From positions 1 through 64,000 of the IMG/VR virus record IMGVR_UViG_3300045999_010033: DNA of 64,000 nt; one strand, 5' to 3'. This document shows, one piece after another, positions 14,434-58,112 of the stretch. Each line of letters starts with the position of its first letter. Within the stretch, counting starts at the first letter, position 1. The position numbers were made by a program, and so were the translations under genes. The notes beneath the pieces are model-generated. The model did no database searches. It was given only the letters and a program-made list of their open reading frames with translations, and had not been told where the DNA came from.

Positions 14434-14584
14434 TTTGGGGATACTCCCCAAAGTTAAGGCTTATTTTTCATACTACAATGGGCTTTTTGATAAAAGTTTT
14501 CGAAATTTTTCGGGGTTTTGTTAGAAATTATCTAATGCCCCTTGATAATCAACGGCTTATGCTTCCCTGAATATCAATGACTTA
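14434..14584 (-). promoter_or_regulatory. P1: Bacteroidota-type promoter + hairpin + two IHF-consensus sites
   Basis: -7 TAACTTTG (14449-56), ATTG 19 nt upstream; hairpin TTTGGGGA-GTA-TCCCCAAA; WATCAANNNNTTR at 14547 and 14572. Confidence 0.85.
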
Positions 14585-14791
14585 CAAGGTTTTTTATAAC
14601 CAATTGATCCTCAATCTCTTATGTATGGTATCCATATAGTATAGATAAAGTATTCAATATCAACGCTTTGCGATTTTTGTTAGATATTTTCTAACTCAAC
14701 ACGATGTTTCATTGAATATTTTCTAACATTATATCCAAATCATTAAATATTTTCTAAACGGCCCATCCATTCACTTCGGCCGGTATGTATT

Positions 14792-14860
14792 CCTTTATAT
14801 TCATTTTGTGGCATGGCCTTATATTCATTTTTCATGTGAGGCAATCCCTTATATTTATTT
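14792..14860 (+). repeat. three CC(T)TTATATT(C/T)ATTT motifs
   Basis: Starts at 14792, 14817 and 14847; the reverse complement matches the 5150-5253 repeats. Confidence 0.7.
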
Positions 14861-14988
14861 TTTTTCAGCGATGGCGACGTGGGTGGGATTTTGGCTACAT
14901 ATCCCCTATCCTTTGATACCATAATTGTTTTATCTACGATTATGGAATATCACATTCGTTTTGATAGAGATGATTCGTTTTAACATGG

Positions 14989-15282
14989 TTATAGGAGTCT
15001 ATCCAATATCCCCTTAATACCTTCAGGTGTTATTTCGGATAGTTTCAATATAAATGTACGCGAAGGTATCACGTATCCATCTTTACTTGCCACTTCCATT
15101 TCGTACATAGAACCCCCATCCGCGGAGATTCTGCTCATCGCTATGTTCAACCAAACCCCGCTACTACCATGATATGCTGATATCCATTGGTATCGGTTAG
15201 GAGTTATTGTAAGTGTGGGTAGGGGAATGCCGATGGTATCATGTAGTATTAACTTATGTGGGTTATTTATAGTTAGTCTCAT
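14989..15282 (-). CDS. LTIxNxxK family paralog
   Basis: MRLTINNPHKL. Confidence 0.75.
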   Translation of the reverse strand: MRLTINNPHKLILHDTIGIPLPTLTITPNRYQWISAYHGSSGVWLNIAMSRISADGGSMYEMEVASKDGYVIPSRTFILKLSEITPEGIKGILDRLL

Positions 15283-15392
15283 ATAATTGGGGGAGTATCT
15301 TGTATGTGTATTATATTATATGGGAGAGTATTCTTTTCTTATTACTACTACTATTACTATATAGATTGGAGGGGTTATTAATAGAATTATTA

Positions 15393-15950
15393 TTAGTGTA
15401 TTCCGAATCGCTGCTGCCAATAAGGTCGTAACACATTCAGCCCTATCGTATGTTCTAATGTATGCGTTGAGAATGCCGTCATTATATGCGATTTGAATGG
15501 AAGGGGTAGGGCATAGTTAGATGTTGGGTCCAGTTTCGGAATGTATCCATCATCGCTCATCAGTAGATACAGTTCCGATATCAGGGGTAACGGAGTGTCC
15601 AAATGGTGTAGCGGCATATTCCATTCCTTATAAACAGAAGTATGTGGTTGAGCCGCACCGTTGTGTATTCGGTGATGGGAAATGGATAGTCCTGCATAAC
15701 GTGTTCCATCGGAGTAGTAGAATGGTTCTCTGTTCATGTAAAGTTTATACATTACAACAGTTCCAGCTGCGGTTGGTTCGGATTCGAATATTATTATGTA
15801 ATATTGAGCGGCATCGGATTCGTATATCTTTAGATTGACTACCGGTCCTAATATTACATTTATTATGTGTCCTAGTTTATCTATATTATGTATTGTCAAT
15901 CTATTACTCATAAGTTTTTTTATTAGTGTATTCCGAATTGATTTTACCAA
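15393..15950 (-). CDS. LTIxNxxK family paralog (likely start MSNRL)
   Basis: RLTIHNIDKL..YYIIIF..LMSDDGYIP. Confidence 0.75.
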   Translation of the reverse strand: MVKSIRNTLIKKLMSNRLTIHNIDKLGHIINVILGPVVNLKIYESDAAQYYIIIFESEPTAAGTVVMYKLYMNREPFYYSDGTRYAGLSISHHRIHNGAAQPHTSVYKEWNMPLHHLDTPLPLISELYLLMSDDGYIPKLDPTSNYALPLPFKSHIMTAFSTHTLEHTIGLNVLRPYWQQRFGIH

Positions 15951-16351
15951 TAAGATGATAACATTTGTTTACTTATTCTATTTGGTAGGTAATCATCGTG
16001 CTTAACCAGTCTTGCAATCACTTCTGCTAATGGATTGGGTTTGGTTAAAGTAGTTAAGTACATTTTAAATTCTCTTATTTTAGGTAAGGGATTCAATTGG
16101 CCATCCTCAACATTATGTGTAGTGAATCGCATTCTAATATAAGGTTTGCCACTTGGGGATACCAATATGGTCCTTTCTATGTTTAAACTATGTTGCTTTG
16201 CGTATTTACCTTCTGCCGTATATTCGTTAAATGCTATCCAATATCTATCTTGGTCACTTCCGAAAAAAGGTGGTGATATCATGTCACCCATTTTAAAATA
16301 AATGGCACTTACCAATTTATCCATATTATATATGGTCAGCTTTTTACTCAT
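15944..16351 (-). CDS. LTIxNxxK family paralog
   Basis: KLTIYNMDKL..YWIAF..HDDYLP. Confidence 0.75.
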   Translation of the reverse strand: MSKKLTIYNMDKLVSAIYFKMGDMISPPFFGSDQDRYWIAFNEYTAEGKYAKQHSLNIERTILVSPSGKPYIRMRFTTHNVEDGQLNPLPKIREFKMYLTTLTKPNPLAEVIARLVKHDDYLPNRISKQMLSSYW

Positions 16352-16353
16352 AC

Positions 16354-16785
16354 TTATTTAATTACATTTATTAATATGGGATGTTTACGCAAAAAGGATT
16401 TCTTATCGTATTCGATTGATGTTTTGCATTGTGGATAGTAATCATCGTCTATTATCATACTCCATATATCATCAATCAAATCGTATGGATATTTTAGTTT
16501 CAATAAAGCCATAGGCCATCGGTAGTTCAGAATGGGGTTTTGTTCTTTGAATATAGATAAAGTAATATACACACATGGTATCCCATCTATATCGGTCGGT
16601 TCTCTATCAATAGAAAATATATAAACCCGTCCATTTACCTTTTCCATAATAAATGCGTATTCCAACTCAGTCGTTTTTGAACGAATATCTAAAAGTTTGT
16701 CATCATCTTCGAAATAATAGTGCGACATTCCACCTAATATGTTAATCAAATACATTTTATTGTATATGGTTATTTTCTTACTCAT
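16354..16785 (-). CDS. LTIxNxxK family paralog
   Basis: KITIYNKMYL..MIIDDDYYP. Confidence 0.75.
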   Translation of the reverse strand: MSKKITIYNKMYLINILGGMSHYYFEDDDKLLDIRSKTTELEYAFIMEKVNGRVYIFSIDREPTDIDGIPCVYITLSIFKEQNPILNYRWPMALLKLKYPYDLIDDIWSMIIDDDYYPQCKTSIEYDKKSFLRKHPILINVIK

Positions 16786-16789
16786 ATCT

Positions 16790-17227
16790 TTATATTGAAA
16801 AACTATGACTGATATTATTCATTATTGGATTAGTATTGCCCAAATTTACTCTCATCTTCGGAATGTGGTCCTCACGACGCACCATAGTTAGTAAGTTAGC
16901 CGTAATGGGCCAATGGTCTTTTAATGATGGTAAGGCTATAGGGTATGTTCTCCTATTACGAAGTTTTGATAATACATCGGTTGTAGCTAGCTTGATATTG
17001 ATATACTTTATCGGGTGGGATGCCGATGCTGTATCTATTTGTATATTCCGAAATATAAAAAGTTCGTGTTTTTTGATTACAGTTCCCATATCATCTGCCT
17101 CTTCAAAGTATAACCAATAATACGTATCGCATTCGAGGGTACAGGTGTTATTAAACGTTAAAGGAAGTAGTGTCTTACCTTCGTCAAGTATTTTACTTAC
17201 ATTTAATATCGTCAACTTTTTACTCAT
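16790..17227 (-). CDS. LTIxNxxK family paralog
   Basis: KLTILNVSKI..YWLYF..REDHIP. Confidence 0.75.
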   Translation of the reverse strand: MSKKLTILNVSKILDEGKTLLPLTFNNTCTLECDTYYWLYFEEADDMGTVIKKHELFIFRNIQIDTASASHPIKYINIKLATTDVLSKLRNRRTYPIALPSLKDHWPITANLLTMVRREDHIPKMRVNLGNTNPIMNNISHSFSI

Positions 17228-31692: not shown

Positions 31693-32520
31693 TTATTTTT
31701 CGTAAACACTAAATGTACTATTCATAGGAATGATGAACGGATTGTTAGCCGTATCAATTTTGTTGCGAACCTTTTTGAATTTCAGTCCAACAATAACACC
31801 CGGCTCATCAATGTATCTCATATCGTATTCATCGCCATCAATTACTTTGTAACCCATAAATGTGGAAGGGAGTCGTTTACCTTCAAACACCATAGCTACA
31901 CGCCCTTTCCTTTCACTCAACAATCTTTCACAATCAATCATATTGTATCCGCTGAACGAATATGTGAGGTCATAGTTCGAATATTGATTTAACAAACGAA
32001 AACGTTTAGCCACCTTTGTATAATCATAAAAGGTAACGTTAGAAAACCACTCCAATATATTCTTACCATCCAATTTGAAAGATTGAGGGTCAATATCAGA
32101 TGTACCATTTATCCTTACCGAAAAACGATACCCAAGTGTATTGGCTTCCAAATGTGCTTTGGTGATTTCGGTAACCAACCATTTCATAAAAAACTCACGA
32201 TGTTCAAAGAACAATTTTGTTTTAGCGATACGAGATTTATTGATACGATTTTCTTTCACATCAATACGATTGTGACCAGATTCGGCCAAACACGCATCAC
32301 GACATTCTTTCGTACTCATTGGACACACATTGTATCCACTCACAGACGCGGGAGCAAGATACAGAATATAGGTACGTTCATTGTACTTTAATCCTTTAGC
32401 GATTTTAGATGAAGATGCTACTGAACCAAGATAGGAAAGGGCAGTCAGTTTTTTAGCTTGAGAAATGTTTGTAAATACCATATTCATAATGTGTGATTTT
32501 TTAGACATAGTGGGTCTCAT
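31693..32520 (-). CDS. phage GP88-like protein
   Basis: LYLAP..G.NVCP..CL..SG, VRINGTSDI, FYDYTK, DGDEYDMRY. Confidence 0.8.
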   Translation of the reverse strand: MRPTMSKKSHIMNMVFTNISQAKKLTALSYLGSVASSSKIAKGLKYNERTYILYLAPASVSGYNVCPMSTKECRDACLAESGHNRIDVKENRINKSRIAKTKLFFEHREFFMKWLVTEITKAHLEANTLGYRFSVRINGTSDIDPQSFKLDGKNILEWFSNVTFYDYTKVAKRFRLLNQYSNYDLTYSFSGYNMIDCERLLSERKGRVAMVFEGKRLPSTFMGYKVIDGDEYDMRYIDEPGVIVGLKFKKVRNKIDTANNPFIIPMNSTFSVYEK

Positions 32521-32549
32521 TGTGTGTTACCACACAAAGTTAGGGCATT
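32495..32549. repeat. 55-bp promoter/leader duplication, copy 1
   Basis: 53/55 identical to 48935-48989. Confidence 0.95.
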
Positions 32550-32645
32550 TTGGGGACATTTCAATGGGCGTTTTGTTAAAAGTTTTCGAAATTTTTGGGG
32601 ATTTTGTTAGAAATTATCAAATAGCCATTGATAATCAACGTGTTA
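32520..32645 (-). promoter_or_regulatory. P2: promoter + hairpin + IHF-consensus site
   Basis: TAACTTTG 32535-42, ATTG 19 nt upstream; TTGTGTG-GTAA-CACACAA; AATCAACGTGTTA at 32633. Confidence 0.85.
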
Positions 32646-32756
32646 TAACTGGTTGATTTTGGGGAAAATAGGATTTTTATTGAGAATCAATTGATTACAT
32701 ATGTAAAAATACTATAATAAAAAACGGATGAGCATTTACGCCCATCCGTCACATAG

Positions 32757-37883: not shown

Positions 37884-37975
37884 TTTGTGTGTCGATACAC
37901 AAATTTACGACAATTTTTTCAAATAACAATGGCTTTTTAAAAATATTTTTTAAGGCACTGAGAATCAATGAGTTA
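37884..37975 (-). promoter_or_regulatory. P3: promoter + hairpin + IHF-consensus site
   Basis: TAAATTTG 37900-07; TTTGTGT-ATCGAC-ACACAAA; AATCAATGAGTTA at 37963. Confidence 0.8.
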
Positions 37976-38025
37976 TGTATATAACCCTGATGTAATGTAT
38001 AACTCGTTGATTTCCAATAAGCGGG

Positions 38026-42190: not shown

Positions 42191-42265
42191 CTTTGTTACA
42201 CAAAGATACGTAAAGTTGCCGATATAACCAAATAATTTTGTAACCCATTGAAAATCAATGAGTTA
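42191..42265 (-). promoter_or_regulatory. P4: promoter + hairpin + IHF-consensus site
   Basis: TATCTTTG 42201-08, TTTG 20 nt upstream; CTTTGT-GTA-ACAAAG; AATCAATGAGTTA at 42253. Confidence 0.85.
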
Positions 42266-46348: not shown

Positions 46349-46357
46349 TTGTGAAAT

Positions 46358-46687: not shown

Positions 46688-46703
46688 TTTTGCAATTTAT
46701 TTA

Positions 46704-48112: not shown

Positions 48113-48296
48113 CTTTTAATACAATGATTTCTTTTACTTTCACCGGCCAAATAGGCATCCTATCAATCGTTACCTGCATATGCCCATGTAACGGATTCAC
48201 TCCGCACGATTGGCAGATACCAGTGATTCTTTGACCGGGCCACTTTGGATGGAGTACACTAATACGTTTACCAACCAAATTCAAATCGTTTCTCAT
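48084..48296 (-). CDS. hypothetical protein
   Basis: Packed ORF. Confidence 0.5.
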   Translation of the reverse strand: MRNDLNLVGKRISVLHPKWPGQRITGICQSCGVNPLHGHMQVTIDRMPIWPVKVKEIIVLKDETNENKFK

Positions 48297-48306
48297 AATA
48301 ATGTGT

Positions 48307-48960
48307 TTATCGCTCTTTAAGTTCTAATGAATCTAAGCTGAAGGGGCAGTACAGCAAAGTTGGATTCTTTTTCTGAATATCAACATTAGGATACTTCTTT
48401 TTGAACTCTATAACATCAAATCTATTAGTAATAAGATGAAATCCATTTTTAGTTGGAATTTCCGCAATACATTTATATCCTTCCGGTCTTAATACGTTGA
48501 TAAATGCCCGGATATCTTCTCTAACAATTTCATCCTTTGTATCAATATCGATAATCCAACGCTTCTCATAAGTTTTCAGTTGCCCAACAACCGAATCAAA
48601 TAAGTTGTTTTGAACGAACTGACCATCTTTGAGTCTTTGTGCCAAAGCCATCATCATATCCAATGAAACATCTTTATGATTTTGTTTCTGAATATGGATG
48701 TAGGCACGTGCTTTAAACATCTCACAAAGTTGGATTATTTCATCATAACGTTTTTCCAAATATTGAATACTGGAAACGCAATATGTTTTTATTGTACGAA
48801 CCGATTGGTGATTATCCCTTTCACCTTCGGGCTGGTCCTTCTTTCTTTTGAAGATATACAACATATAAAAGTCACCCTCGTTATCGAAGTTCAGCAAAGG
48901 TTTGATTAATTCGATATTGTTTATCATACTATACGATTTTTTAGACATAGTGGGTCTCAT
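48307..48960 (-). CDS. possible AEP/primase-like fold protein
   Basis: WIIDID and TKNGFH resemble AEP motifs I/II (inference). Confidence 0.5.
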   Translation of the reverse strand: MRPTMSKKSYSMINNIELIKPLLNFDNEGDFYMLYIFKRKKDQPEGERDNHQSVRTIKTYCVSSIQYLEKRYDEIIQLCEMFKARAYIHIQKQNHKDVSLDMMMALAQRLKDGQFVQNNLFDSVVGQLKTYEKRWIIDIDTKDEIVREDIRAFINVLRPEGYKCIAEIPTKNGFHLITNRFDVIEFKKKYPNVDIQKKNPTLLYCPFSLDSLELKER

Positions 48961-48989
48961 TGTGTATTACTACACAAAGTTAGGGCATT
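48935..48989. repeat. 55-bp promoter/leader duplication, copy 2
   Basis: 53/55 identical to 32495-32549. Confidence 0.95.
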
Positions 48990-49136
48990 CTGTGCTAATA
49001 AACAAACCTATTTGTTGAATTTTTTCTAAATTTTTGAGGACTTTGTTAGAAAAAATCTAATAGTCATTGATTATCAACGAGTTATAACTCATTGATATTC
49101 TATGAATTATAACGTCTATTGATAATCAATGACTTA
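48960..49136 (-). promoter_or_regulatory. P5: promoter + hairpin + two IHF-consensus sites
   Basis: TAACTTTG 48975-82, TTTG 20 nt upstream; TTGTGTA-GTAA-TACACAA; sites at 49072 and 49124. Confidence 0.85.
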
Positions 49137-49145
49137 CGTGGAGAA

Positions 49146-49604: not shown

Positions 49605-49656
49605 GCGCTTTTTGTTTTGATTAAAAATATGCCATCATTGTGACATTTATATTGAG

Positions 49657-49731
49657 TTGGGTGTGCCAGATTCGAACTGGCGATTTCTTGCTCCCAAAGC
49701 AAGCGCGATAACCGGACTACGCTAACACCCA
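49657..49731 (-). tRNA. tRNA-Pro(TGG)
   Basis: CTTGC-TTTGGGA-GCAAG. Confidence 0.9.
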
Positions 49732-49780
49732 GTGTTTAAGTATTAAATATAAGTATTTTTTTGGATTAAACCAAAACTGA

Positions 49781-50515: not shown

Positions 50516-50556
50516 CTCTTTTCCTTTATAATAGGTATAATGGAATTGAGAAAAAA

Positions 50557-50634
50557 TGGTAGTCCCATCGTGATTCGAACACGAAACCTACGCTTTAGAA
50601 GAGCGTCGCTCTAATCCTGTTGAGCTATGGGACC
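50557..50634 (-). tRNA. tRNA-Arg(TCT)
   Basis: ACGCT-CTTCTAA-AGCGT; CCA encoded. Confidence 0.93.
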
Positions 50635-50653
50635 ATAAAAGATAATTATCTTT

Positions 50654-50727
50654 TGGCGGTTCGTAGGGGTTACGCTCCCCTGCCTTCGCAGTGACAGTGC
50701 GATATTCTACTATTATACTAACGAACC
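50654..50727 (-). tRNA. tRNA-Asp(GTC), T-loop AGCGTAA
   Basis: TCGCA-CTGTCAC-TGCGA; G73, CCA encoded. Confidence 0.87.
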
Positions 50728-50734
50728 AAAACTG

Positions 50735-50817
50735 AGCCGAGAGCCGGATTCGAACCGGCGTGTCCTTGCGGATCCTGATTACAAGTCAGGTGCAATCGGC
50801 CACTATGCGACCTCGGC
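50735..50817 (-). tRNA. tRNA-Thr(TGT) with long variable arm
   Basis: CCTGA-CTTGTAA-TCAGG; variable arm TCC-GCAA-GGA. Confidence 0.85.
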
Positions 50818-51021
50818 TTATATTATCTTACAATACTATATACAACCGTCAACATCCAACCATCTCCATTGCTGTTGGTATGTACTGATTCAATCTTTAT
50901 TGTGTTTGGTCCAAATTCTGCAACCCATGCATCAAATTGCCGATTCAATTCATCACCAGCAAAGGTGCCGCGTTTTCCACTTGTAAATACTTTAATCATA
51001 TACTTTTATTTTTATTTTCTG

Positions 51022-51153
51022 CGTCAGGGTGGGGAATCGAACCCCACACTCTCATACCAGGAGCTATGCCTAGAGTTACATCACGTATAGTGTTTTCACA
51101 CATCCCCTATATTATGCGACGGCCTTAACGTTTACCCATTACGTCACCTGACT
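51022..51153 (-). ncRNA. ~130-nt expanded tRNA-like RNA
   Basis: AGTCAGG/CCTGACG; D arm ACGT-AATGGGTAA-ACGT; ~80-nt insert; GTGGGG-TTCGATT-CCCCAC. Confidence 0.78.
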
Positions 51154-51343
51154 ACCACTTCTATTTAATTTTGAATAGCCTATCGAAGAATCGTTTTAGA
51201 GTCGGTTTTAGTTTTCGATTTCTTTTTAGCTCTTCTTGATACGCTATTACTTCCAATACCTCATCAAACCTAATTGGAGTTCCTCTACGGACATCATCGG
51301 ATAACTTTTCTAATCTTTCGTTTTTCATTTTTTTATTGTTCAG

Positions 51344-51439
51344 TAGTCAGGACACGAATCGAATCTGTATTTAGGATTGTTTAATCGGGCTTCATACCGT
51401 ACCTACCTTTCGGTGCGTCTACCGTTCCGCCACCTGACT
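51344..51439 (-). ncRNA. tRNA-like RNA with degraded T stem
   Basis: AGTCAGG/CCTGACT-A; GCG-GAACGGTAGA-CGC; ACCG-11 nt-CGGT arm. Confidence 0.72.
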
Positions 51440-51446
51440 ATTTTAT

Positions 51447-51701
51447 TTATATCCACTTAATACGATTTTCTGTGTCCATCCATTGTTGGAATTGATTTTT
51501 GTTAACCAAACACGTTCTCTTTTCTTCACCAAACATATTATTCATTGTAATTGATGTATCAGGGACAGAAATCAAACACTCAACAATCAAATGATCCCCT
51601 ATCTCACCATGTTCATCATCATAATCTTTTTCTTTCCATCCTAAAATTTCCAAAACGTATTTATTATCTATTCTAATGAATTTTAAAAGACTTTTTTCCA
51701 T
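51447..51701 (-). CDS. hypothetical protein
   Basis: Packed ORF. Confidence 0.55.
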   Translation of the reverse strand: MEKSLLKFIRIDNKYVLEILGWKEKDYDDEHGEIGDHLIVECLISVPDTSITMNNMFGEEKRTCLVNKNQFQQWMDTENRIKWI

Positions 51702-51702
51702 G

Positions 51703-52011
51703 TTATTTAGTTTTTGCGATTTCTACATTCAAAGCATTATTGAGCAATGAATACAATTTTGATGTAAAATCTCTCGAAAAGATTGACATCCAATTCATCT
51801 CTGTTTCCAACTCCTCAATAGATTCACGAATACTATCTTGATATCCTTTATGGTTAGTCACAATCCACAATGCAAGATTATTAATTCTTACTTTAAGTGA
51901 CTCGGATAAACATCCGTTATTTTGCATCATACAAAAAACTTGGTCTGCCCATTCATTACCACCAGTATCAAACAACTTGTTTTTGTCAGTGTATTTTTTC
52001 ATAATAATCAA
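51703..52011 (-). CDS. hypothetical protein
   Basis: Packed ORF. Confidence 0.5.
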   Translation of the reverse strand: MIIMKKYTDKNKLFDTGGNEWADQVFCMMQNNGCLSESLKVRINNLALWIVTNHKGYQDSIRESIEELETEMNWMSIFSRDFTSKLYSLLNNALNVEIAKTK

Positions 52012-52018
52012 TTTTTAG

Positions 52019-52096
52019 TAGTCAGGACAGGATTCGAACCTGCATGGTCACTCCTTTGTGTACACCGCGAGCTGCGTTACCATTCGCCACCTGACT
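52019..52096 (-). ncRNA. tRNA-like RNA without a canonical anticodon loop
   Basis: AGTCAGG/CCTGACT-A; GCG-AATGGTAA-CGC; GCAGG-TTCGAAT-CCTGT. Confidence 0.78.
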
Positions 52097-52240
52097 AACC
52101 ATAGGAAAGAAGAAGATGGTCGCGTGGACAACTTCTTTTACGATTGGCGTTACTTAGGTGAATACCTCCCAACTCCGATTATATCAGCCGGTATTCACTC
52201 TCGTGCTGTTGATATAATCATTCCCCAATCAACCTATTTG

Positions 52241-52313
52241 TACTCCCGACCGGAATCGAACCGGCATCTTCAGATCGAAAATCTGACGAACTCAACCATT
52301 ATTCGACGGGAGC
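52241..52313 (-). tRNA. tRNA-Glu(TTC)
   Basis: TCAGA-TTTTCGA-TCTGA. Confidence 0.88.
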
Positions 52314-52363
52314 AATTGTTATACAATGATAAGGAATTTATTTGTATATTCCAAATCTATGTG

Positions 52364-52439
52364 GGTAACTAATGGGGTACGATCCCATAATCTTCTGCTT
52401 CACAAACAGACGCTTTATTCCATTTAAGCGATAGCTACC
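52364..52439 (-). tRNA. tRNA-His(GTG), T-loop ATCGTAC
   Basis: TCTGT-TTGTGAA-GCAGA; G-1:C73. Confidence 0.88.
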
Positions 52440-52447
52440 ATATAAAG

Positions 52448-52519
52448 AGGCGGGAGTAGGAATCGAACCTACCTAAGAGGGGTTGCAGTCCTCCACCTGA
52501 GCCACTCGGCCATCCCGCC
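52448..52519 (-). tRNA. tRNA-Cys(GCA)
   Basis: GAGGA-CTGCAAC-CCCTC; U73. Confidence 0.88.
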
Positions 52520-52525
52520 AGCCTA

Positions 52526-53086
52526 TTACCTATCCATTATGATTTTAGCAAAATTCGTATCAACCTTCACTCTCTCTATCAATTGCTGCGATGTCATATT
52601 TTTAGCTTCTTCCAATATCTTGTCCTTTTGGCTTGCTATACCCAAATCCACCTGTGCTTCCTTTGCCATTGATTTCAATTCAGTAACTACAAAGGTAGAA
52701 AGTTCATGCGGTATTTGTTTAGCCGCCGAATCCGTAGTAAGGAATTGCATCGTACCACCGCCGGCTATGATTAGTAATGTTTCTTTCTTTGTAGGAGTAA
52801 ACATATAACCCGCCCAAGTAATCAAAGATAAAACCAAAGTAACATAAAATATACTTGAGATGTATCGTTTTAACATTTTTGCCGAACGAACCTCAGGATG
52901 TGTTTTTTCTTCTTCTTCGGTTTTACAATTACCATCAGAAATTTGACTCATTAAATGCATCGCCGCACCTATCATCGCAATAAATGCAAAAATAGCCATC
53001 CACGTAAAAATATCACTTGCTACATCGAAGAAAGTCCTAACAGAATCTGCACGAGTTACCCAATAAAAAATAGAATACCAATTCAT
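52526..53086 (-). CDS. multi-pass membrane protein
   Basis: Two to three TM segments; PTKKE motif. Confidence 0.7.
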   Translation of the reverse strand: MNWYSIFYWVTRADSVRTFFDVASDIFTWMAIFAFIAMIGAAMHLMSQISDGNCKTEEEEKTHPEVRSAKMLKRYISSIFYVTLVLSLITWAGYMFTPTKKETLLIIAGGGTMQFLTTDSAAKQIPHELSTFVVTELKSMAKEAQVDLGIASQKDKILEEAKNMTSQQLIERVKVDTNFAKIIMDR

Positions 53087-53105
53087 AACATTTGATTTTA
53101 AAAAA

Positions 53106-53348
53106 TTAAACTAATTTATTTGCGATTTTCAAAATTGTTTCCTCATCTTCTTTTGTTAGTTTCCACGCATTTCCAATGAGTTTGCTTACTTGCGCATCAA
53201 ATTCACTAACGGATACATCATCCGGATGAACTCCACCCATTTGCTTTGGAACATATCCATCTTCATACAATGCGTCTGCTAACTCTTGCTTTTCATATCG
53301 GGCTAAACCGAAAATAAGGTCATCAACATCAATTTCAATACTTGCCAT
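53106..53348 (-). CDS. hypothetical protein
   Basis: Packed ORF. Confidence 0.6.
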   Translation of the reverse strand: MASIEIDVDDLIFGLARYEKQELADALYEDGYVPKQMGGVHPDDVSVSEFDAQVSKLIGNAWKLTKEDEETILKIANKLV

Positions 53349-53358
53349 AACTTTTATT

Positions 53359-53880
53359 TTATTTATTTAGTTTACTAATACACTCATCAACTTTGTCACG
53401 CAACCTACCACCATTTCCGTGGTCACCATTCACCTGAACGTGTCTCCATTGTGGAACACGCATCCATTTGAATTGGCCGGCGAGATTCAAATCATCAATG
53501 GCAATCCAATTTTTCACTCCGTTATCCTTTACCCATTTACGAATTTCTGCCGCACGTTCCCATTCGATTGGTGGACGGCTCATTTTCTTCCATAGGTCTT
53601 GATGTGTGGTGATATCAATCAACAAGTGACCAGGTATTCCAAAGTGTTCAAATACTCGTTTCATTTGGATAAAACTGAAATGCTTTCTCCAATCCGAGCT
53701 CAATACAAGTCGTGCATCAGTCTCACGAAGAACTTTGTGTAGAGCCTGGCAATCTTCCTCTACCCATCTGTATGGGATTTTGAACAATTGTGAACCGGCG
53801 TGCAGTTCAACACGGCCCGTTCCCCATGTTCCCCATGCCAATGGGCCATCAACATCAATGAATATGATTTTATTGTTCAT
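53359..53880 (-). CDS. HAD-family phosphatase (Swiss-Army-Knife RNA-repair type)
   Basis: IIFIDVDGPL, LVLSSDWR, WIAIDD. Confidence 0.85.
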   Translation of the reverse strand: MNNKIIFIDVDGPLAWGTWGTGRVELHAGSQLFKIPYRWVEEDCQALHKVLRETDARLVLSSDWRKHFSFIQMKRVFEHFGIPGHLLIDITTHQDLWKKMSRPPIEWERAAEIRKWVKDNGVKNWIAIDDLNLAGQFKWMRVPQWRHVQVNGDHGNGGRLRDKVDECISKLNK

Positions 53881-54559
53881 CTTTTTTAGTTTTTAATCTC
53901 AAGTCACCAAACTTACTATTGGCGAGCAAGTCATCGTAATCTTTGTATCCTTGCTCTCTCGCCCATTCATCGCTTTTCTTTTGGCGATACTCTTTTACTT
54001 TCTCCGGGTCTTTCATTTGCTCAACACTCTCAAACCCTAAATCACGTGCACATTCCGATTCGCACCATCCATGTGAACCGATTTCTATATTGATTGGAAG
54101 GTCGGTTTCCAATGATTCGATGAAATTTTCAAATTGATTTGCAGCTACAAATGGCATTGAGTAACTACCTTCGGAAACAGCGTATCCGCTTTCATCTTCA
54201 CTATCGAATATCTCAATCCTACCCATACGATACCTTTCACCGAATAATGAAAATACACCATAGCCAACGGTAGAGTAACTGAACCGACCCGGATGACTTA
54301 CCCCTTCGTTATCAATACAACCGGGGTTCACTTCCATCCAATTGGCCAATTCATTAATCAATTCTTCATCGGATAATTCTGGCGATTTACGCCTGATGTT
54401 TTTGAGAAACCATCCTAACTTACTTCTATCCACTTTCATAACAATTCGTTTTAATGTAGCCTCTGAGCGAATCGAACGCCCACCAATTGATCCGTAGTCA
54501 ATCATTCTATCCGTTAAACTAAAAGGCCGGTTAGCACGGGTTGTAAGAATCGAACTCAC
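53870..54559 (-). CDS. hypothetical protein (true start downstream of tRNA-Trp, probably MKVDRSK)
   Basis: Annotated start overlaps a tRNA. Confidence 0.6.
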   Translation of the reverse strand: MSSILTTRANRPFSLTDRMIDYGSIGGRSIRSEATLKRIVMKVDRSKLGWFLKNIRRKSPELSDEELINELANWMEVNPGCIDNEGVSHPGRFSYSTVGYGVFSLFGERYRMGRIEIFDSEDESGYAVSEGSYSMPFVAANQFENFIESLETDLPINIEIGSHGWCESECARDLGFESVEQMKDPEKVKEYRQKKSDEWAREQGYKDYDDLLANSKFGDLRLKTKKDEQ

Positions 54560-54603
54560 TCCTAGGGATTTGGAGTCCCATTGGCTACCATAGCCTAACC
54601 CGT
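54535..54603 (-). tRNA. tRNA-Trp(CCA)
   Basis: GGGA-CTCCAAA-TCCC; short D arm; G73. Confidence 0.85.
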
Positions 54604-54608
54604 GTATG

Positions 54609-54682
54609 TGTTTGGAGTGAGACTCGAACTCACATCCTCTTCGGTATCAGCGAAGTGCTCCAACCAATTGAGCTATCCAAAC
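54609..54682 (-). tRNA. tRNA-Ile(GAT)
   Basis: CTTCG-CTGATAC-CGAAG. Confidence 0.9.
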
Positions 54683-54686
54683 ATTG

Positions 54687-54760
54687 TGACCCCGCTGCGA
54701 CTCGAACGCAGGACTCCTAAATTAAAAGTTTAGTGCTCTAACCAACTGAGCTACGAGGTC
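54687..54760 (-). tRNA. tRNA-Lys(TTT)
   Basis: CTAAA-CTTTTAA-TTTAG. Confidence 0.92.
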
Positions 54761-54766
54761 AACTAT

Positions 54767-55291
54767 TCATTCTATATCAGAATTAGAATTGTACTGAAAC
54801 GTTATAAACGTATGTTCCAAGTACATATCATGTTCTATCTTTATATTTTCCGGAGAGATATCATAAGAACACATATCACAATTCCACAATGCTTCCCACA
54901 ATCCGGCTTTGAATTGGGCCTCATCGTTGTATTTGGTCAAACCCAATATACATCCCAACGTCGGCGGTAAATACTTTCTTTCCAATTCTTTACAATGTTC
55001 TCTATACGCTTTCCAATTCTCCGGATTTTCCATATCACTCGTCCATGCATCATGCAGTTTTTTATTCATATCCGTATCCTCTTCGCTTACCTGAATCAGG
55101 TTATTAGAGTGTAGGTATTCGGTGGACAGTGTAGGCAAATTGTTTGTTACAATGTATTCACCTACATACATTCCGAGCATATAATCAACACTAACGGAAT
55201 CAAACCACTTTTGAGTTTGGGCGATTTGCTCTTCCCTATATTCGGGCGTCTTCACTCTACGAAACAATTCATCCAATGATATTTTACGCAT
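54767..55291 (-). CDS. hypothetical protein
   Basis: ORF between tRNAs; LWNCDMCSY motif. Confidence 0.65.
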   Translation of the reverse strand: MRKISLDELFRRVKTPEYREEQIAQTQKWFDSVSVDYMLGMYVGEYIVTNNLPTLSTEYLHSNNLIQVSEEDTDMNKKLHDAWTSDMENPENWKAYREHCKELERKYLPPTLGCILGLTKYNDEAQFKAGLWEALWNCDMCSYDISPENIKIEHDMYLEHTFITFQYNSNSDIE

Positions 55292-55306
55292 ATTATTATT
55301 TTTTAG

Positions 55307-55382
55307 TGGTGGAGCCTCAGGGAATCGAACCCCATCCTCCCGCTCTTCAGGCGGGCGTACGCACCAGCTATACGAAAGCTCC
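55307..55382 (-). tRNA. tRNA-Phe(GAA)
   Basis: CCCGC-CTGAAGA-GCGGG; CCA encoded. Confidence 0.92.
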
Positions 55383-55438
55383 TGGCGGCCGCCTCTTACT
55401 ATTTCATAAGATATTTACTCAGGCATTTGGCCATGTTG

Positions 55439-55520
55439 TTGGGGTAGACGGACTCGAACCGCCGGACTCCGAAGAGAGAGCATTTACAGTGCCCCGCAAT
55501 TGCCGCTATGCGATACCCCA
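55439..55520 (-). tRNA. tRNA-Tyr(GTA)
   Basis: GGGCA-CTGTAAA-TGCTC; long variable arm. Confidence 0.9.
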
Positions 55521-55526
55521 TTGTAG

Positions 55527-55598
55527 TAGAAGGTGGGAATTACGATATCCCGACCTCTTGGATGTAAACCAAGTGCTCTGCCTCTGAGCTAACCTTCT
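55527..55598 (-). tRNA. tRNA-Val(TAC), T-loop ATCGTAA
   Basis: CTTGG-TTTACAT-CCAAG. Confidence 0.88.
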
Positions 55599-55628
55599 CC
55601 GTTTTCCATATGTCAAAGAACATACCTG

Positions 55629-55700
55629 CGCTGATGGAGAATTACGATATCCCGACCTGAGTCTTAACAGGACCCTGCTCTACCTCTGAGCTACATCAGC
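55629..55700 (-). tRNA. tRNA-Asn(GTT), T-loop ATCGTAA
   Basis: GGGTC-CTGTTAA-GACTC; G73. Confidence 0.88.
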
Positions 55701-55914
55701 AAATGACAATAACGAAAATACCCCCGAAACAATCAGGGGTATTTTACGCTATCACAGTCTACTTATATGTTCACTATGCCCCTGCTATACATTTGTATCG
55801 AACACGCAGACTCCTTCCCACTTAATGATGGGATACGTGCGATTGATATGTTTATTAAACAGGTTCATAATTGTTTTGTTATAAGTATAAAGTATTTTCA
55901 AAAAAAGTTACCAG

Positions 55915-55985
55915 AGCGAAGCCAGAGAGTCGAACTCCATCCTGCGACCTGGAGGGCCGCCGTGCTACCGTTACACTAACTCCAC
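55915..55985 (-). tRNA. second, degenerate tRNA-Gly(TCC)
   Basis: GCGGC-CCTCCAG-GTCGC; many G-U pairs in acceptor and T stems; C33. Confidence 0.6.
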
Positions 55986-55989
55986 TTAT

Positions 55990-56800
55990 AAAGGTGAGAT
56001 TACCCTTTGTTGAGAACAGCCTTTAGAAAGATTATTAGTTCCTCTCTTATCCACCACCTTTTGAGCGGTATCCGTTCAGTGTCGGTTAGTAATGCTAACC
56101 ACTCATTAAGTTACTGACTACTCTCTTATTACTCCCCTTCTTCTACCCTGCCGAGCAGATTCACACTTGCGGTGTTAGAAGCTTTTCGTAAGAATCACAG
56201 ACCTCTTGCGGAGGTATCGTGGCTGGGAACAACTCCCAACTATGTAGACACCTTTCATCCGTAACTGATGGGCACTTATGCTTCATTTTGATTTTATAGT
56301 TTTGCTACCAAATGCAAGTATAAAGTTGGTTTGTAGATTGATTCAGGTAGTGGCCCATCTGCCAGCTCCCTCACCTTTTGAGTGAGGAAATACTAAACTA
56401 CCCGATGTGATATCCCTATCACCATATTTTAAGTCTGCTTCATAACTCATGCTTTGGTAAGCGAAGGTTAAGGGCAACAACGACACCACTCGTACTTTAC
56501 CATACCTTTCGGTTTTAAGTGAACTCTAATATTGGATAACGAAATGATACGAAGGGATTAAGTTCGTACTTCTCACATATACCCTATGGGTTATTCCTAT
56601 TATCCTTCCGGATTCAAATGAACTATCTACTTAGCCCATTCACCCAGACACCTCACCTACAGCCTTGCCGTCAGTTACTAAGTCCGAGTGGTATCCCACT
56701 TGCCTACTCAACCTCTTTTGGGAGGCGCATCGGTGCTTAACCAAACACCAACACTTTATCCTACTTTCGTAGTTTATTTAACGACCATAGGCGGCCGATT
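55990..56800 (-). ncRNA. probable GOLLD RNA (~810 nt)
   Basis: ORF-free, hairpin-dense region in a tRNA cluster; segments (CGCCTATGGTCGTTAAATAAACTACGAAAGTAGG; AAAGGTGTCTACATAGT; ACCGCAAGTGT; CTCGGCAGGGT) match my recollection of GOLLD; ends approximate; not confirmed by a covariance-model search. Confidence 0.72.
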
Positions 56801-57079
56801 TGTACTATGTAACGCGAGGTTACTATGTACTCATTTCGTAATGTAAAAGAACTTTAATGTGAACCAAACTTACGCCCTATTAAGGATACTCCGTTTATAC
56901 TACTTTCACATCTGAATCGGTAGTGCGATTTTACTAAAGATAAGTAAAGTTTTTCAAATTACCAAATCTTTATTCGTTGAACATTTTCGGTTATGTTTAT
57001 TTACACCATATAATACTTCCTACTTCTGAACAAGTTTATAAAGTTAAGTAAAGTTTTTCAACTTTCCAAATCTTTATAG

Positions 57080-57151
57080 TTGCGGGGGGTGGAATCGAAC
57101 CACCGTAGGCGAGGCTTATGAGACCTGCGGATAACCAACAATCTCCCCACA
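57080..57151 (-). tRNA. tRNA-Met(CAT), initiator-like but atypical
   Basis: AGGT-CTCATAA-GCCT; TGTGGGG/CCCCGCA. Confidence 0.75.
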
Positions 57152-57185
57152 ATGTATAAATATATATAAAGAACTATTTTTTTAG

Positions 57186-57257
57186 ATGCCCTTTTAGGAT
57201 TCGAACCTAAACTAACAGAATCAAAATCTGTTGTGCTAACCGTTACACTAAAGAGCA
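57186..57257 (-). tRNA. tRNA-Gln(TTG)
   Basis: ACAGA-TTTTGAT-TCTGT. Confidence 0.9.
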
Positions 57258-57277
57258 ATTTTCAAATCTCATTTTCG

Positions 57278-57352
57278 TTTGATAACTCAAAGTTAAGGAA
57301 AATTTTCCAATCTACCAAATTTTTTTGTTATCCATTGAAAATCAACGAATTG
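57278..57352 (-). promoter_or_regulatory. P6: promoter + hairpin + IHF-consensus site
   Basis: TAACTTTG 57288-95, TTTG 20 nt upstream; TTTGA-GTTA-TCAAA; AATCAACGAATTG at 57340. Confidence 0.85.
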
Positions 57353-57359
57353 ATTATAA

Positions 57360-57450
57360 TAACACATCCATCTCTTATTGACTACCATAAACACATTCTG
57401 TATGGTTTACCACATCTATAATCTATGACACATAGGAGATGGATGTGTTA
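57360..57450. other. perfect 15-bp stem closing a three-way junction
   Basis: TAACACATCCATCTC / GAGATGGATGTGTTA with two internal hairpins. Confidence 0.75.
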
Positions 57451-57583
57451 AAATTTGCTCGTCTATTCCGAGCCGCCAATCAGTATCGAGTAACTAATAC
57501 GTAGCATACCACTACACTATCTGTCGAGGGAGGTGATTCCCCACAGACCTTGTGGCTTCTTTATCACCCATACCACAATAGTG

Positions 57584-57657
57584 TGGACTCTCACGGGCTC
57601 GAACCGTGGACCTAATGATTATGAGTCATTTGCTCTAACCAACTGAGCTAAGAGTCC
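57584..57657 (-). tRNA. tRNA-Ile2/Met(CAT)
   Basis: AATGA-CTCATAA-TCATT; body resembles lysidine-type Ile2. Confidence 0.88.
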
Positions 57658-57661
57658 AAAG

Positions 57662-57994
57662 TGGACGTGGTGGGAGTCGAACCCACGTCTTGATAAGAAA
57701 TCCTACCACCAACGTATCACAAGTTTATTCCTACATTCGGGTTGGACACCTATCTAACATTCTCACACCGTGTTAGCCGACGGTGATAGTGGTTCGATTC
57801 GGCCACTATGCCACATAGAGAATCACATTCTATTTTAATCCCACGATGTGTGCGGGAGCGGTTACGCAGCTACTGCGTACTCAGCGTTGGCGTATGTGTT
57901 GCCAGTTATTCTTCGATACAATATTAAGGGATAGTATCATTTCCCTACTTGTGATGGTAACACTCACATACCAATCAATTACCAATACACGCCC
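57662..57994 (-). ncRNA. ssrA: tmRNA, tag (A)GNTYANAEYAVAA*
   Basis: GGGCGTG/CACGTCC-A with G3-U70; T arm GTGGG-TTCGACT-CCCAC; ATAACT-GGC resume context; tag ORF 57903..57862. Confidence 0.93.
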
Positions 57995-58023
57995 ATATTT
58001 ATAAGAACTATATATCTCCCATT

Positions 58024-58112
58024 TTTGGTCGATAACCAAAGTTACTACTTTTTTTTGGATTTACCAAACATTTCGGAAAATATTTTTTAAATCGTTGAAA
58101 ATCAACCGATTA
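58024..58112 (-). promoter_or_regulatory. P7: promoter + hairpin + IHF-consensus site (drives the tmRNA)
   Basis: TAACTTTG 58037-44, TTTG 20 nt upstream; TTTGGT-TATCG-ACCAAA; AATCAACCGATTA at 58100. Confidence 0.85.

What the first reader, a model, noticed from the sequence alone, without database searches (positions are those of the whole stretch)
14434..58112. Seven-copy promoter module: IHF-consensus site + Bacteroidota promoter + covarying hairpin built on the -7 box
Seen: at 14434, 32520, 37884, 42191, 48960, 57278 and 58024 the TTTG (or TTG) of the -7 element (TAnnTTTG) starts an inverted repeat with a 5-8 bp stem and loops GTA, GTAA, GTTA, TATCG or ATCGAC. Stem sequences differ but always pair. 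Every copy has an exact WATCAANNNNTTR (established IHF consensus), usually within TTGA-N3-TCAA. Its offset from the -7 box falls into three classes (52,52; 63,63; 97,98,98 nt). Established analogues: promoter-early stem-loops of RB49-like phages and N4 hairpin promoters. Inference: the hairpin covers the start site, so it probably acts in DNA (open-complex switch, regulator or recombinase site). With IHF bending it could be a temporal switch or a recombination hotspot for gene cassettes.
Basis: partly seen in the sequence, partly recalled or inferred. Interest (0 to 1): 0.75.

Follow-up and report, generated by a model that had tools for sequence, protein, structure and literature searches.

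The report
Phage promoter cassettes with start-site hairpin
A large uncultured phage of Bacteroidota carries eight copies of a host-type promoter whose start site sits inside a small, evolutionarily maintained DNA hairpin. Seven of them also have an upstream palindrome that is widespread in uncultured phages and Bacteroidota genomes and has no known binding protein.

Summary
All seven sites lie on the minus (coding) strand and have the Bacteroidota promoter form: -33 TTG, a 19-20 nt spacer, then -7 TAHHTTTG. In each, the T-tract of the -7 box starts a perfect inverted repeat (stem 5-8 bp, loop 3-6 nt). No shuffle or arm-swap control reached the observed pairing. Paralogous and orthologous copies keep the pairing through compensatory changes. 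I found an eighth hairpin promoter at 59070 that has no upstream site.

By Flavobacterium johnsoniae numbering, the predicted start falls in or next to the hairpin loop. The promoter's own transcript therefore lacks the left arm, so the pairing must act in DNA or in read-through RNA.

The "IHF site" is the reverse read of a more specific unit, TAACTCRTTGAT. It usually forms a 25-bp imperfect palindrome, TAACTCRTTGA-N3-TCAAYGAGTTA. The element is non-coding and common in uncultured phages and Bacteroidota genomes. IHF binding is possible but untested, and its distance from the promoter is not helically phased once related copies are collapsed.

The seven modules are one homologous family in three length classes. 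One module was copied in front of unrelated genes, and neighbouring gene order is shuffled among relatives. The closest analogue is the PeSL promoter-terminator cassette of T4-type phages. How the hairpin works remains inferred.

The parts
14434..14559 (-). Module 1 (long class), upstream of a 136-aa ORF (14011-14421). Unit/palindrome 14542-14559; -33 TTG 14476-14478; -7 box TAACTTTG 14449-14456; repeat arms 14445-14452 and 14434-14441, loop GTA; predicted +1 at 14444.
   Evidence: alignment A1
32520..32657 (-). Module 2 (long class), upstream of a phrog_1617 protein (31693-32520). Units 32634-32645 (-) and 32646-32657 (+), head to head; palindrome core 32628-32638; -33 32562-32564; box 32535-32542; arms 32531-32537 and 32520-32526, loop GTAA; predicted +1 at 32530. 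A canonical terminator lies at 32723-32750 and a further palindrome at 32680-32690.
37884..38011 (-). Module 3 (63 class), upstream of a CobT-like 717-aa gene (35710-37863), which is followed by an AAA ATPase (34372-35667). Unit 37964-37975 with core 37958-37968; inverted unit 38000-38011 (+); UP-like AAAAAATATTTTTAAAAA; -33 37927-37929; box 37900-37907; arms 37897-37903 and 37884-37890, loop ATCGAC; predicted +1 at 37895.
42191..42265 (-). Module 4 (52 class), upstream of an ATP-dependent DNA ligase (41042-42154). 25-bp palindrome 42241-42265, which folds at -15.3 kcal/mol as RNA; -33 42229-42231; box 42201-42208; arms 42200-42205 and 42191-42196, loop GTA; predicted +1 at 42196.
48960..49136 (-). 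Module 5 (long class), upstream of a phrog_14949 protein (48307-48960). Units 49073-49084 (-) and 49085-49096 (+), head to head; core 49067-49077; second palindrome 49119-49136; -33 49003-49005; box 48975-48982; arms 48971-48977 and 48960-48966, loop GTAA; predicted +1 at 48970.
57278..57352 (-). Module 6 (52 class), upstream of tRNA-Gln (57185-57257). Unit/palindrome 57335-57352; -33 57316-57318; box 57288-57295; arms 57287-57291 and 57278-57282, loop GTTA; predicted +1 at 57283.
58024..58112 (-). Module 7 (63 class), upstream of the tmRNA (57661-57994). Unit/palindrome 58095-58112; UP-like AAAAAATATTTT; -33 58065-58067; box 58037-58044; arms 58035-58040 and 58024-58029, loop TATCG; predicted +1 at 58032.
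59054..59092 (-). It precedes a 52-aa ORF (58887-59045) and a 246-aa ORF.
14521..14757 (-). Array of a second palindromic site, TTAGAWAATWTYTAA(CAAA), at 14521, 14680, 14712 and 14743, about 31 bp apart for the last three. Copies occur inside the other long modules at 32607, 32576, 49046 and 49015. This region also holds extra TAACTCRTTGAT-like units at 14573-14584 and 14597-14608.

Best explanation
What it is (high confidence). These are copies of one composite promoter cassette. They head transcription units on the minus strand of a roughly 221-kb uncultured jumbo phage (IMGVR_UViG_3300045999_010033) and are read by a Bacteroidota-type host sigma-A RNA polymerase. From 5' to 3' a cassette holds:
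1. One or more copies of the unit TAACTCRTTGAT, usually as the imperfect 25-bp palindrome TAACTCRTTGA-N3-TCAAYGAGTTA.
2. An A/T-rich tract resembling an UP element.
3. The -33 TTG.
4. The -7 TAHHTTTG.
5. A short perfect inverted repeat that begins in the T-tract of the -7 box.

The loop of the repeat holds or adjoins the predicted +1. The cassettes drive the tmRNA, tRNA-Gln, a DNA ligase, a CobT-like gene followed by an AAA ATPase, and three genes of unknown function.

How it probably works (inferred). Pairing of the two arms is itself under selection. The promoter's own RNA starts in or just after the loop and lacks the left arm. The structure must therefore form in DNA. My preferred model is that the arms pair on the non-template strand as the bubble extends to about +6 to +12. 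This would pull the TTTG of the -7 element away from sigma and help escape from a near-consensus, tightly bound promoter. Alternatively the repeat extrudes as a small supercoil-dependent cruciform that gates opening.

The upstream palindrome is most likely a site for a dimeric or architectural DNA-binding protein available at the start of infection, meaning a host factor. An IHF/HU-type protein is one candidate. Its variable, unphased distance from the promoter suggests a boundary or architectural element, like the stem-loop of a PeSL, rather than a contact activator.

The cassettes spread by recombination and carry their regulation to new genes.

The confidence given (0.55) is a blend: about 0.85 for the identity of the cassette and for selection on the pairing, about 0.3 for the specific DNA-level mechanism.
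For: Promoter identity:
- The boxes fit T-12 A-11 H H T-8 T-7 T-6 G-5 with the start 4-5 nt further on, as in F. johnsoniae (PMC6847099). A TTG lies 19-20 nt upstream.
- All copies are in non-coding gaps directly upstream of co-oriented genes or RNA genes.
- Sigma-70-type matches are fewer than in shuffles (59 vs 76).

Hairpin:
- The statistics are given.
- Compensatory changes occur within paralog sets: G:C to A:T between 32520 and 48960; T:A to G:C twice in 14434; T:A to A:T between 42191 and 57278.
- Orthologous phrog_1617 promoters in four phages all keep a repeat on the box, with different stems: TTGTGTG, TTTGG, CTTTAC and TTTGT.
- An IMG/VR scan whose pattern did not include the hairpin gave 14 of 35 modules with a repeat of 5 bp or more, against 1.9 expected. 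After de-replication it was 6 of 21 against 1.16, with a shuffle maximum of 5.
- In 120 host-genome loci, 1 of 49 promoter-pattern matches had such a repeat, against 1.4 expected.
- In the window, 7 of 7 palindrome promoters have the repeat. Six other promoter-like sites (five TAnnTTTA, one TAnnTTTG) have neither feature.
- Geometry: the left arm spans about -9 to -1 and the right arm about +1 to +12.

Palindrome:
- More than 118 IMG/VR stretches and more than 120 genome stretches match, the latter mostly Bacteroidota.
- Only 8% of viral hits and 36% of host hits lie in long open frames, against 66% and 84% of the surrounding sequence.
- The right flank YGAGTTA is enriched.
- A/C and G/T combinations at the R/Y pair are equally common (22 each), which gives no sign of RNA pairing.

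Mobility:
- Modules 32520 and 48960 share the promoter, the leader and the first nine codons in front of otherwise unrelated proteins.
- The ligase has no such module in most relatives.
- Gene order is shuffled among relatives while the phrog_1617 gene keeps its module.
Against: - No transcription start has been mapped for this phage or its host. The +1 position is transferred from F. johnsoniae.
- The stems are short. Predicted DNA hairpin energies are only -2.0 to -6.8 kcal/mol, so stable cruciforms are unlikely for the 5-bp cases.
- 60% of palindrome-linked promoters in other phages lack a repeat of 5 bp or more, so it is not essential.
- The hairpin and the palindrome can be separated (59070 here; L340).
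- The escape-assist model has no direct precedent that I can cite.
- No binding protein for the palindrome was identified. No protein family consistently co-occurs with it, and no HU/IHF or recognisable DNA-binding domain was found among the 52 small ORFs.
- In bacterial genomes the palindrome is seldom next to a promoter pattern (5 of 107). In some places it is part of a terminator hairpin (L288, L317, L109, L237).
Confidence: 0.55

Rival explanations
1. First reader's model. The upstream site binds host IHF, which bends the DNA. Together with the start-site hairpin this forms a temporal switch or a recombination hotspot for gene cassettes.
For: - An exact WATCAANNNNTTR is present in all seven modules.
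- Classical HU/IHF-like proteins exist in Bacteroidota, and one serves as a host factor for CTnDOT integration (PMC5499826).
- The units occur singly and in both relative orientations, as expected for an asymmetric 13-bp site.
- The cassettes have moved.
Against: - The N4 positions are conserved as YGAG, and the unit is usually half of a 25-bp palindrome. This is more specific than the IHF consensus.
- The two ATCAA/TTGAT halves are 1 bp apart. This would not let two IHF-type sites be occupied together (my reading of the lambda H' complex geometry, from memory).
- There is no helical phasing after de-replication.
- The sequence preference of any Bacteroidota IHF-like protein is unknown.
- The delimited duplication junction is not at the hairpin.
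Confidence: 0.2
2. The inverted repeat is an operator-like target for a phage-made protein that recognises structure or loose sequence (TTTG...CAAA, or an extruded hairpin). This protein shuts these promoters off later in infection.
For: - A dyad centred within about 3 nt of +1 is the classical operator position.
- The repeat is confined to one promoter class in the window.
- Phage-encoded proteins that silence early promoters are known, for example SPO1 TF1 (own knowledge).
Against: - The spacing between TTTG and CAAA ranges from 5 to 12 bp, and the inner stem sequences differ. This does not fit a sequence-specific dimer.
- No candidate protein was identified in the window.
Confidence: 0.15
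3. The hairpin acts in RNA, but only in transcripts that read through from upstream. There it would serve as a processing, stability or insulation signal that distinguishes read-through RNA from promoter-initiated RNA.
For: - All genes are co-oriented, and only one of the four modules between 30 and 50 kb is preceded by a canonical terminator. Read-through is therefore likely.
- Compensatory changes fit RNA as well as DNA.
Against: - The repeat is always anchored on the -7 box rather than placed freely in the gap.
- No U-tract follows it.
- The stems are too short for RNase III.
- None of the 25 repeats is extended by a G/T pair (weak evidence).
Confidence: 0.12
4. The hairpin is the recognition element of a phage-encoded RNA polymerase, as in N4 early promoters. 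The -33/-7 match would then be incidental.
For: The stem and loop sizes resemble N4 promoter hairpins (own knowledge).
Against: - The match to the Bacteroidota consensus is complete, including spacing and the absence of G at -10 and -9.
- The dyad sits within about 3 nt of +1, not upstream of the start.
- Stem sequences are not conserved.
- No RNA polymerase gene was seen in the window.
Confidence: 0.03
5. The repeat has no function. It would be a by-product of TTTG followed by an A-rich leader, or of palindrome-correcting replication errors.
For: - TTTG/CAAA pairing alone is favoured by base composition.
- Many related promoters lack a long repeat.
Against: - Inner pairs covary.
- The arm-swap control never reaches the observed value.
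- Enrichment survives de-replication.
- Host-genome promoter-pattern matches show no enrichment.
Confidence: 0.05

Closest known systems
PeSL (promoter-early stem-loop) cassettes of T4-type phages (Arbiol et al. 2010, PMC2839356; Comeau et al. 2014, PMC4122927)
   Same: Both are repeated composite cassettes with the order stem-loop-capable element, A/T-rich tract, strong host-type promoter, gene start. Both lie in gene-shuffled regions full of small genes of unknown function. Both show evidence of cassette-mediated gene reshuffling.
   Different: - The PeSL stem-loop is a tested terminator of variable GGGG/CCCC type. Here the upstream element is a sequence-conserved 25-bp palindrome, mostly without a T-run, and it also occurs in bacterial genomes.
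- PeSLs are not described as having a second hairpin built on the -10 element and start site.
- The promoter here is the Bacteroidota -33/-7 type, not sigma-70.
Bacteroidota sigma-A promoters (-33 TTTG / -7 TANNTTTG; PMC6847099)
   Same: Same box, same spacing, the same avoidance of G at -10 and -9, and A/T-rich upstream DNA.
   Different: In 49 promoter-pattern matches from host-genome loci there was no excess of a repeat on the box. The upstream palindrome is rarely next to such matches in hosts.
Hairpin promoters of coliphage N4 virion RNA polymerase (own knowledge)
   Same: A small DNA hairpin (5-7 bp stem, 3-nt loop) inside a phage early promoter, acting in DNA.
   Different: The N4 hairpin lies upstream of the start, has conserved bases and is read by a phage polymerase with host SSB. 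Here the dyad is within about 3 nt of +1, the stems are not conserved, and the promoter is of the host type.
IHF-assisted phage promoters (lambda pL, Mu Pe) and SPO1 TF1 (own knowledge)
   Same: A site matching WATCAANNNNTTR lies upstream of a phage promoter. A bending protein acting on early promoters is plausible.
   Different: Binding is untested. The motif is more specific than the IHF consensus and is palindromic. Its position is not phased.

Membership tests
Bacteroidota sigma-A (-33/-7) promoter | -7 element TAHHTTTG (T-12 A-11 T-8 T-7 T-6 G-5, no G at -10 or -9) | tested here: met
   All eight boxes fit: TAAC, TAAC, TAAA, TATC, TAAC, TAAC, TAAC or TAGA followed by TTTG. The eighth has a G at -10.
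Bacteroidota sigma-A (-33/-7) promoter | -33 TTG/TTTG about 19-20 nt upstream of the box | tested here: met
   The spacer is 19 or 20 nt in all eight.
Bacteroidota sigma-A (-33/-7) promoter | Transcription starts 4-5 nt after the box | not testable with these tools
   No transcript data are available. The position is transferred from F. johnsoniae.
IHF binding site (E. coli type) | 13-bp consensus WATCAANNNNTTR | tested here: met
   An exact match is present in all seven modules, plus four extra copies within the modules. There are 28 matches in the window on both strands, 11 of them in modules.
IHF binding site (E. coli type) | Only the consensus positions are conserved and the site is asymmetric | tested here: not met
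   The N4 positions are conserved as YGAG. The unit is usually half of a 25-bp palindrome.
IHF binding site (E. coli type) | Bound and bent by an IHF/HU-family protein of the host or phage | not testable with these tools
   No HU/IHF domain was found among the 52 small ORFs of the window. Bacteroidota do have HU/IHF-like host factors.
PeSL cassette | Strong host-type early promoter with an A/T-rich upstream tract, repeated in the genome | tested here: met
   There are eight copies. The 63-class modules carry UP-like tracts such as AAAAAATATTTTTAAAAA. Early timing is inferred, not shown.
PeSL cassette | A stem-loop just upstream of the promoter that terminates upstream transcription | tested here: inconclusive
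   Only the copies at 42191 and 48960 fold much better than shuffles (z -6.1 and -4.9); the rest do not. No T-run follows in the window. In some relatives and hosts the same palindrome is followed by a T-run.
PeSL cassette | Association with gene insertion, deletion or replacement between relatives | tested here: met
   The ligase lacks the module in most relatives. Gene order is shuffled. One module sits in front of unrelated genes.
N4-type hairpin promoter | Hairpin upstream of the start, with conserved bases, read by a phage virion RNA polymerase | tested here: not met
   The dyad is centred within about 3 nt of the predicted +1 and the stems are not conserved. No polymerase gene was seen in the window.
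Intrinsic terminator (for the -7-box hairpin) | G+C-rich stem followed by a U-run | tested here: not met
   The repeat is followed by A-rich leaders such as AAATGAG. The terminator scan did not report it.
Any Rfam RNA family | Score at or above the gathering threshold | tested here: not met
   No family matches the modules.

The most novel reading that the evidence does not exclude
A host-type promoter carries a built-in DNA hairpin that pairs the T-tract of its own -7 element with the first transcribed bases. This would act as a structural switch on opening or escape, without a dedicated protein. It is coupled to a phylum-wide 25-bp palindrome that is the site of an undescribed Bacteroidota DNA-binding factor, which phages use to mark or insulate their early transcription units.
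Probability: 0.25. Interest if true: 0.8.

Novelty: new variant of a known kind. Interest (0 to 1): 0.6.

Why it matters
- Transcription control in Bacteroidota phages is almost unstudied. These cassettes offer a readable regulatory grammar for a large clade of uncultured freshwater jumbo phages.
- A selected hairpin centred on the start site of a host-polymerase promoter would be a new kind of promoter element. It is simple to test with stem-breaking and compensatory mutants.
- The palindrome points to an unknown, widespread DNA-binding activity in Bacteroidota.
- The cassettes are compact, probably strong, portable promoters that could be useful for genetic tools in Bacteroidota.
- They show that PeSL-like cassette shuffling is not confined to T4-type phages of Proteobacteria.

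Tried and rejected
- Nucleotide search of an 11-kb stretch against cultured phages found nothing. Short-query searches with the palindrome gave only chance-level hits plus one 23-nt match in an Azobacteroides phage.
- Full-text searches for the motif strings and for Bacteroidota-phage promoter palindromes found nothing relevant.
- Rfam gave no match to the modules at gathering or permissive thresholds.
- Guilt by association: clustering ORFs within 1.2 kb of the palindrome in 118 viral loci gave no dominant family. Pfam on the recurrent families gave DUF932, PhoH, a small GIY-YIG and a weak OB-fold hit for the 136-aa protein, and nothing that binds DNA specifically.
- No HU/IHF or helix-turn-helix domain was found among 52 small ORFs.
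- Helical phasing of the palindrome looked significant in 35 modules (Rayleigh p about 5e-4) but vanished after collapsing to 21 clusters (p about 0.5). I rejected it.
- The palindrome as an RNA hairpin: at the R/Y pair, A/C and G/T are equally frequent, and only two of nine window copies fold better than all 200 shuffles.
- The long-class module pattern occurs only three times in IMG/VR, all in this contig, so it gave no extra copies for covariation.
- Single-protein locus searches for two downstream genes returned few relatives.
- The wobble-asymmetry test on pairs flanking the hairpin was uninformative because of conserved context.

Full report
**Source and layout.** The window is part of IMGVR_UViG_3300045999_010033, a 221-kb viral contig. 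GC content is 37.5%. Nearly all ORFs lie on the minus strand, along with 24 tRNAs found by ARAGORN (Rfam finds two more), a tmRNA and a GOLLD RNA. Annotated genes include NAMPT, two RNA ligases, a DNA ligase, a CobT-like protein and an AAA ATPase. The nearest cultured or deposited relatives are only 33-34% identical at the protein level. IMG/VR holds many related freshwater contigs.

**Checking the observation.** Read on the minus strand, each of the seven sites is TTG, 19-20 nt, TAHHTTTG. Each is followed by a perfect inverted repeat whose left arm starts at -9 to -7.

- The summed stem length of 46 was never reached in 5000 shuffles of the downstream 24 nt (mean 11.3, maximum 30).
- It was also never reached in 1854 derangements that join each left arm to another promoter's right arm (mean 21.3, maximum 38). 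The inner, non-TTTG/CAAA pairs therefore match specifically.
- Among the 96 other TAnnTTTG boxes in the window, only four have a 5-bp repeat and none is longer.

**Relationship among the copies.** The seven are one homologous module in three length classes.

- The three long copies align at 80% identity, from an upstream palindrome to the first codons of the gene.
- The 63 class equals the 52 class plus an 11-bp insertion between the palindrome and the -33 element.
- The long class carries two copies of a second palindromic site, TTAGAWAATWTYTAA. Module 14434 has three more of these upstream, about 31 bp apart.
- The long-class backbone occurs nowhere else in IMG/VR.

**Evidence that pairing is selected.** Within each paralog set the stems differ by changes on both sides.

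- G:C to A:T between 32520 and 48960.
- Two T:A to G:C changes in 14434.
- T:A to A:T between 42191 and 57278.
- Orthologous promoters of the phrog_1617 gene in four phages (59-78% protein identity) all carry a repeat on the box. The stems are TTGTGTG/CACACAA, TTTGG/CCAAA, CTTTAC/GTAAAG and TTTGT/ACAAA.

A scan of IMG/VR used a pattern that specifies the palindrome, the -33 and the -7 box but not the hairpin. It returned 35 distinct modules, of which 14 have a repeat of 5 bp or more, against 1.9 expected. After collapsing to 21 clusters it was 6 against 1.16, with a shuffle maximum of 5.

In 120 bacterial loci, mostly Bacteroidota, 1 of 49 promoter-pattern matches has such a repeat, against 1.4 expected. 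In the window, six other promoter-like sites (five TAnnTTTA, one TAnnTTTG) have neither a palindrome nor a hairpin of 5 bp or more.

**Geometry.** In F. johnsoniae the box is T-12 A-11 T-8 T-7 T-6 G-5 and the start is 4-5 nt after it (PMC6847099). Applied here, the left arm covers about -9 to -1, the loop holds or adjoins +1, and the right arm covers about +1 to +12. The promoter's own RNA would contain only the right arm.

The distance from hairpin to start codon or mature RNA varies from 12 to 38 nt. The repeat is therefore tied to the promoter, not to translation. DNA hairpin energies are modest, from -2.0 to -6.8 kcal/mol.

Given this, I favour a DNA-level role. One option is non-template-strand pairing as the bubble grows, which would strip the TTTG from sigma and aid escape. 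The other is a supercoil-dependent structure that gates opening. This step is inference. Alternatives are an operator-like target for a late phage protein, or an RNA role in read-through transcripts.

**The upstream site.** The IHF match is the reverse read of TAACTCRTTGAT.

- In the window the exact or one-mismatch units are all inside modules, in both orientations. Some form TTGA-N3-TCAA palindromes and some lie head to head.
- The 18-nt core gave more than 118 stretches in IMG/VR and more than 120 in one-genome-per-species bacteria. The genome hits are mostly Bacteroidota, namely Saprospiraceae, Bacteroidales, Flavobacteriales, Chitinophagales and Cytophagales.
- The hits are strongly non-coding.
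- In viral hits the right flank is enriched for YGAGTTA, which gives a 25-bp imperfect palindrome.
- At the R/Y pair, A/C and G/T combinations are equally frequent, so RNA pairing is not indicated.
- Some copies are followed by a T-run or sit inside terminator hairpins after host tRNA-Ser genes. Most are not.
- A separate, more G+C-rich group of viral contigs has two palindromes flanking a 22-24-bp G+C-rich spacer, upstream of sigma-70-like promoters.
- No protein family consistently accompanies the motif. No HU/IHF or recognisable DNA-binding domain is present among 52 small ORFs.
- The palindrome centre lies at -57, -57, -68, -68 and -102/-103 in the window, and between -56 and -79 in other phages. 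The apparent 11-bp ladder disappears after de-replication.

I conclude that this is a protein-binding boundary or architectural element of unknown partner. IHF-like binding is possible but not demonstrated.

**Mobility.**

- Modules 32520 and 48960 share the promoter, the leader and nine codons (MRPTMSKKS) in front of proteins that are otherwise unrelated.
- The DNA ligase, at 58-80% identity in 79 relatives, is preceded by this module only here. One degenerate copy occurs in L050.
- Gene order around the modules differs in every relative examined. The phrog_1617 gene nevertheless keeps its module in L060 and L174.

This matches the behaviour of PeSL cassettes (PMC2839356, PMC4122927). PeSLs share the order stem-loop, A/T tract, promoter. 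They lack both the conserved palindrome sequence and the hairpin on the start site.

| Reading | Outcome |
|---|---|
| Promoter | Supported |
| Covarying DNA-level hairpin | Supported |
| PeSL-like cassette | Supported |
| IHF site | Unproven |
| Offset classes as phasing | Not supported |
| N4-like promoter | Not supported |

It is a new variant of a known kind of element. Two questions remain open and testable: what the start-site hairpin does, and what binds the palindrome.

Noticed in passing
55991-56405 (-), with non-coding 56406-57184 upstream: A full-length match to the Rfam GOLLD RNA model (296.6 bits) sits directly beside tRNA-Gly (55914-55985). Two near-identical promoters (AAAGATTTGG-N19-TAnnTTTA, boxes at 57046 and 56942) lie upstream and probably drive it. 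A third copy of this promoter type is at 44515. None has the palindrome or the hairpin.
   Followed up: partly
57661-57994 (-): A phage-encoded tmRNA (tag GNTYANAEYAVAA) is driven by module 7. An exact TATAAATA lies just 5' of the mature end, possibly a second promoter of another class.
   Followed up: no
42828-57657 (-), and 12283-12376 (-): There are 24 tRNA genes by ARAGORN, and Rfam adds 50657-50727 and 55629-55700. The 94-nt tRNA at 12283-12376 has an unassigned anticodon and may carry an intron or be otherwise atypical.
   Followed up: no
39819-40160 (-): A 114-aa ORF matches the C-terminal domain of ribosomal protein bL12 (Pfam Ribosomal_L12, E 2.9e-6; motif GLGLKESK).
   Followed up: partly
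14521-14757, 32576-32621, 49015-49060 (-): A second palindromic motif, TTAGAWAATWTYTAA(CAAA), gives 18 strand-specific matches against 5.9 expected (about 12 distinct places). It is concentrated in the long-class modules and forms an array of about 31-bp spacing upstream of module 14434. It is probably the site of another regulator.
   Followed up: partly
14422-14436 (-): The leader of the 136-aa gene contains GAGGTGGTGAT, a strong Shine-Dalgarno-like sequence, which is unusual for Bacteroidota. It also holds a three-codon mini-ORF (ATG AGG TGG TGA) that ends just before the start codon. A conserved leader, AAATGRGAG, follows the hairpin in five of the seven modules.
   Followed up: no
14011-14421 (-): The 136-aa protein behind module 1 has a weak, sub-threshold Pfam hit to an RPA-related OB-fold family (RADX, E 6.9e-5). 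It may be a single-strand DNA-binding protein.
   Followed up: no
L129, L163, L183, L212, L217 (IMG/VR loci): A more G+C-rich group of viral contigs carries the same 25-bp palindrome in pairs that flank a 22-24-bp G+C-rich spacer, upstream of sigma-70-like -35/-10 promoters. The element is therefore not limited to phages with Bacteroidota-type promoters.
   Followed up: partly
L067, L073, L078-L081, L089, L097 (upstream of ligase homologues): More distant relatives have a different promoter design. A G+C-rich hairpin (GGCCTTCGGGCC) sits between a TTTG and a TATATTTAG-like box.
   Followed up: no
L206:3860-3960; L288:1518-1660; L317:3960-4090: The palindrome flanks a tRNA 3' fragment in one viral contig, in an arrangement that resembles an attP site. 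In two Bacteroidota genomes it lies inside the terminator hairpin after tRNA-Ser(TGA).
   Followed up: partly
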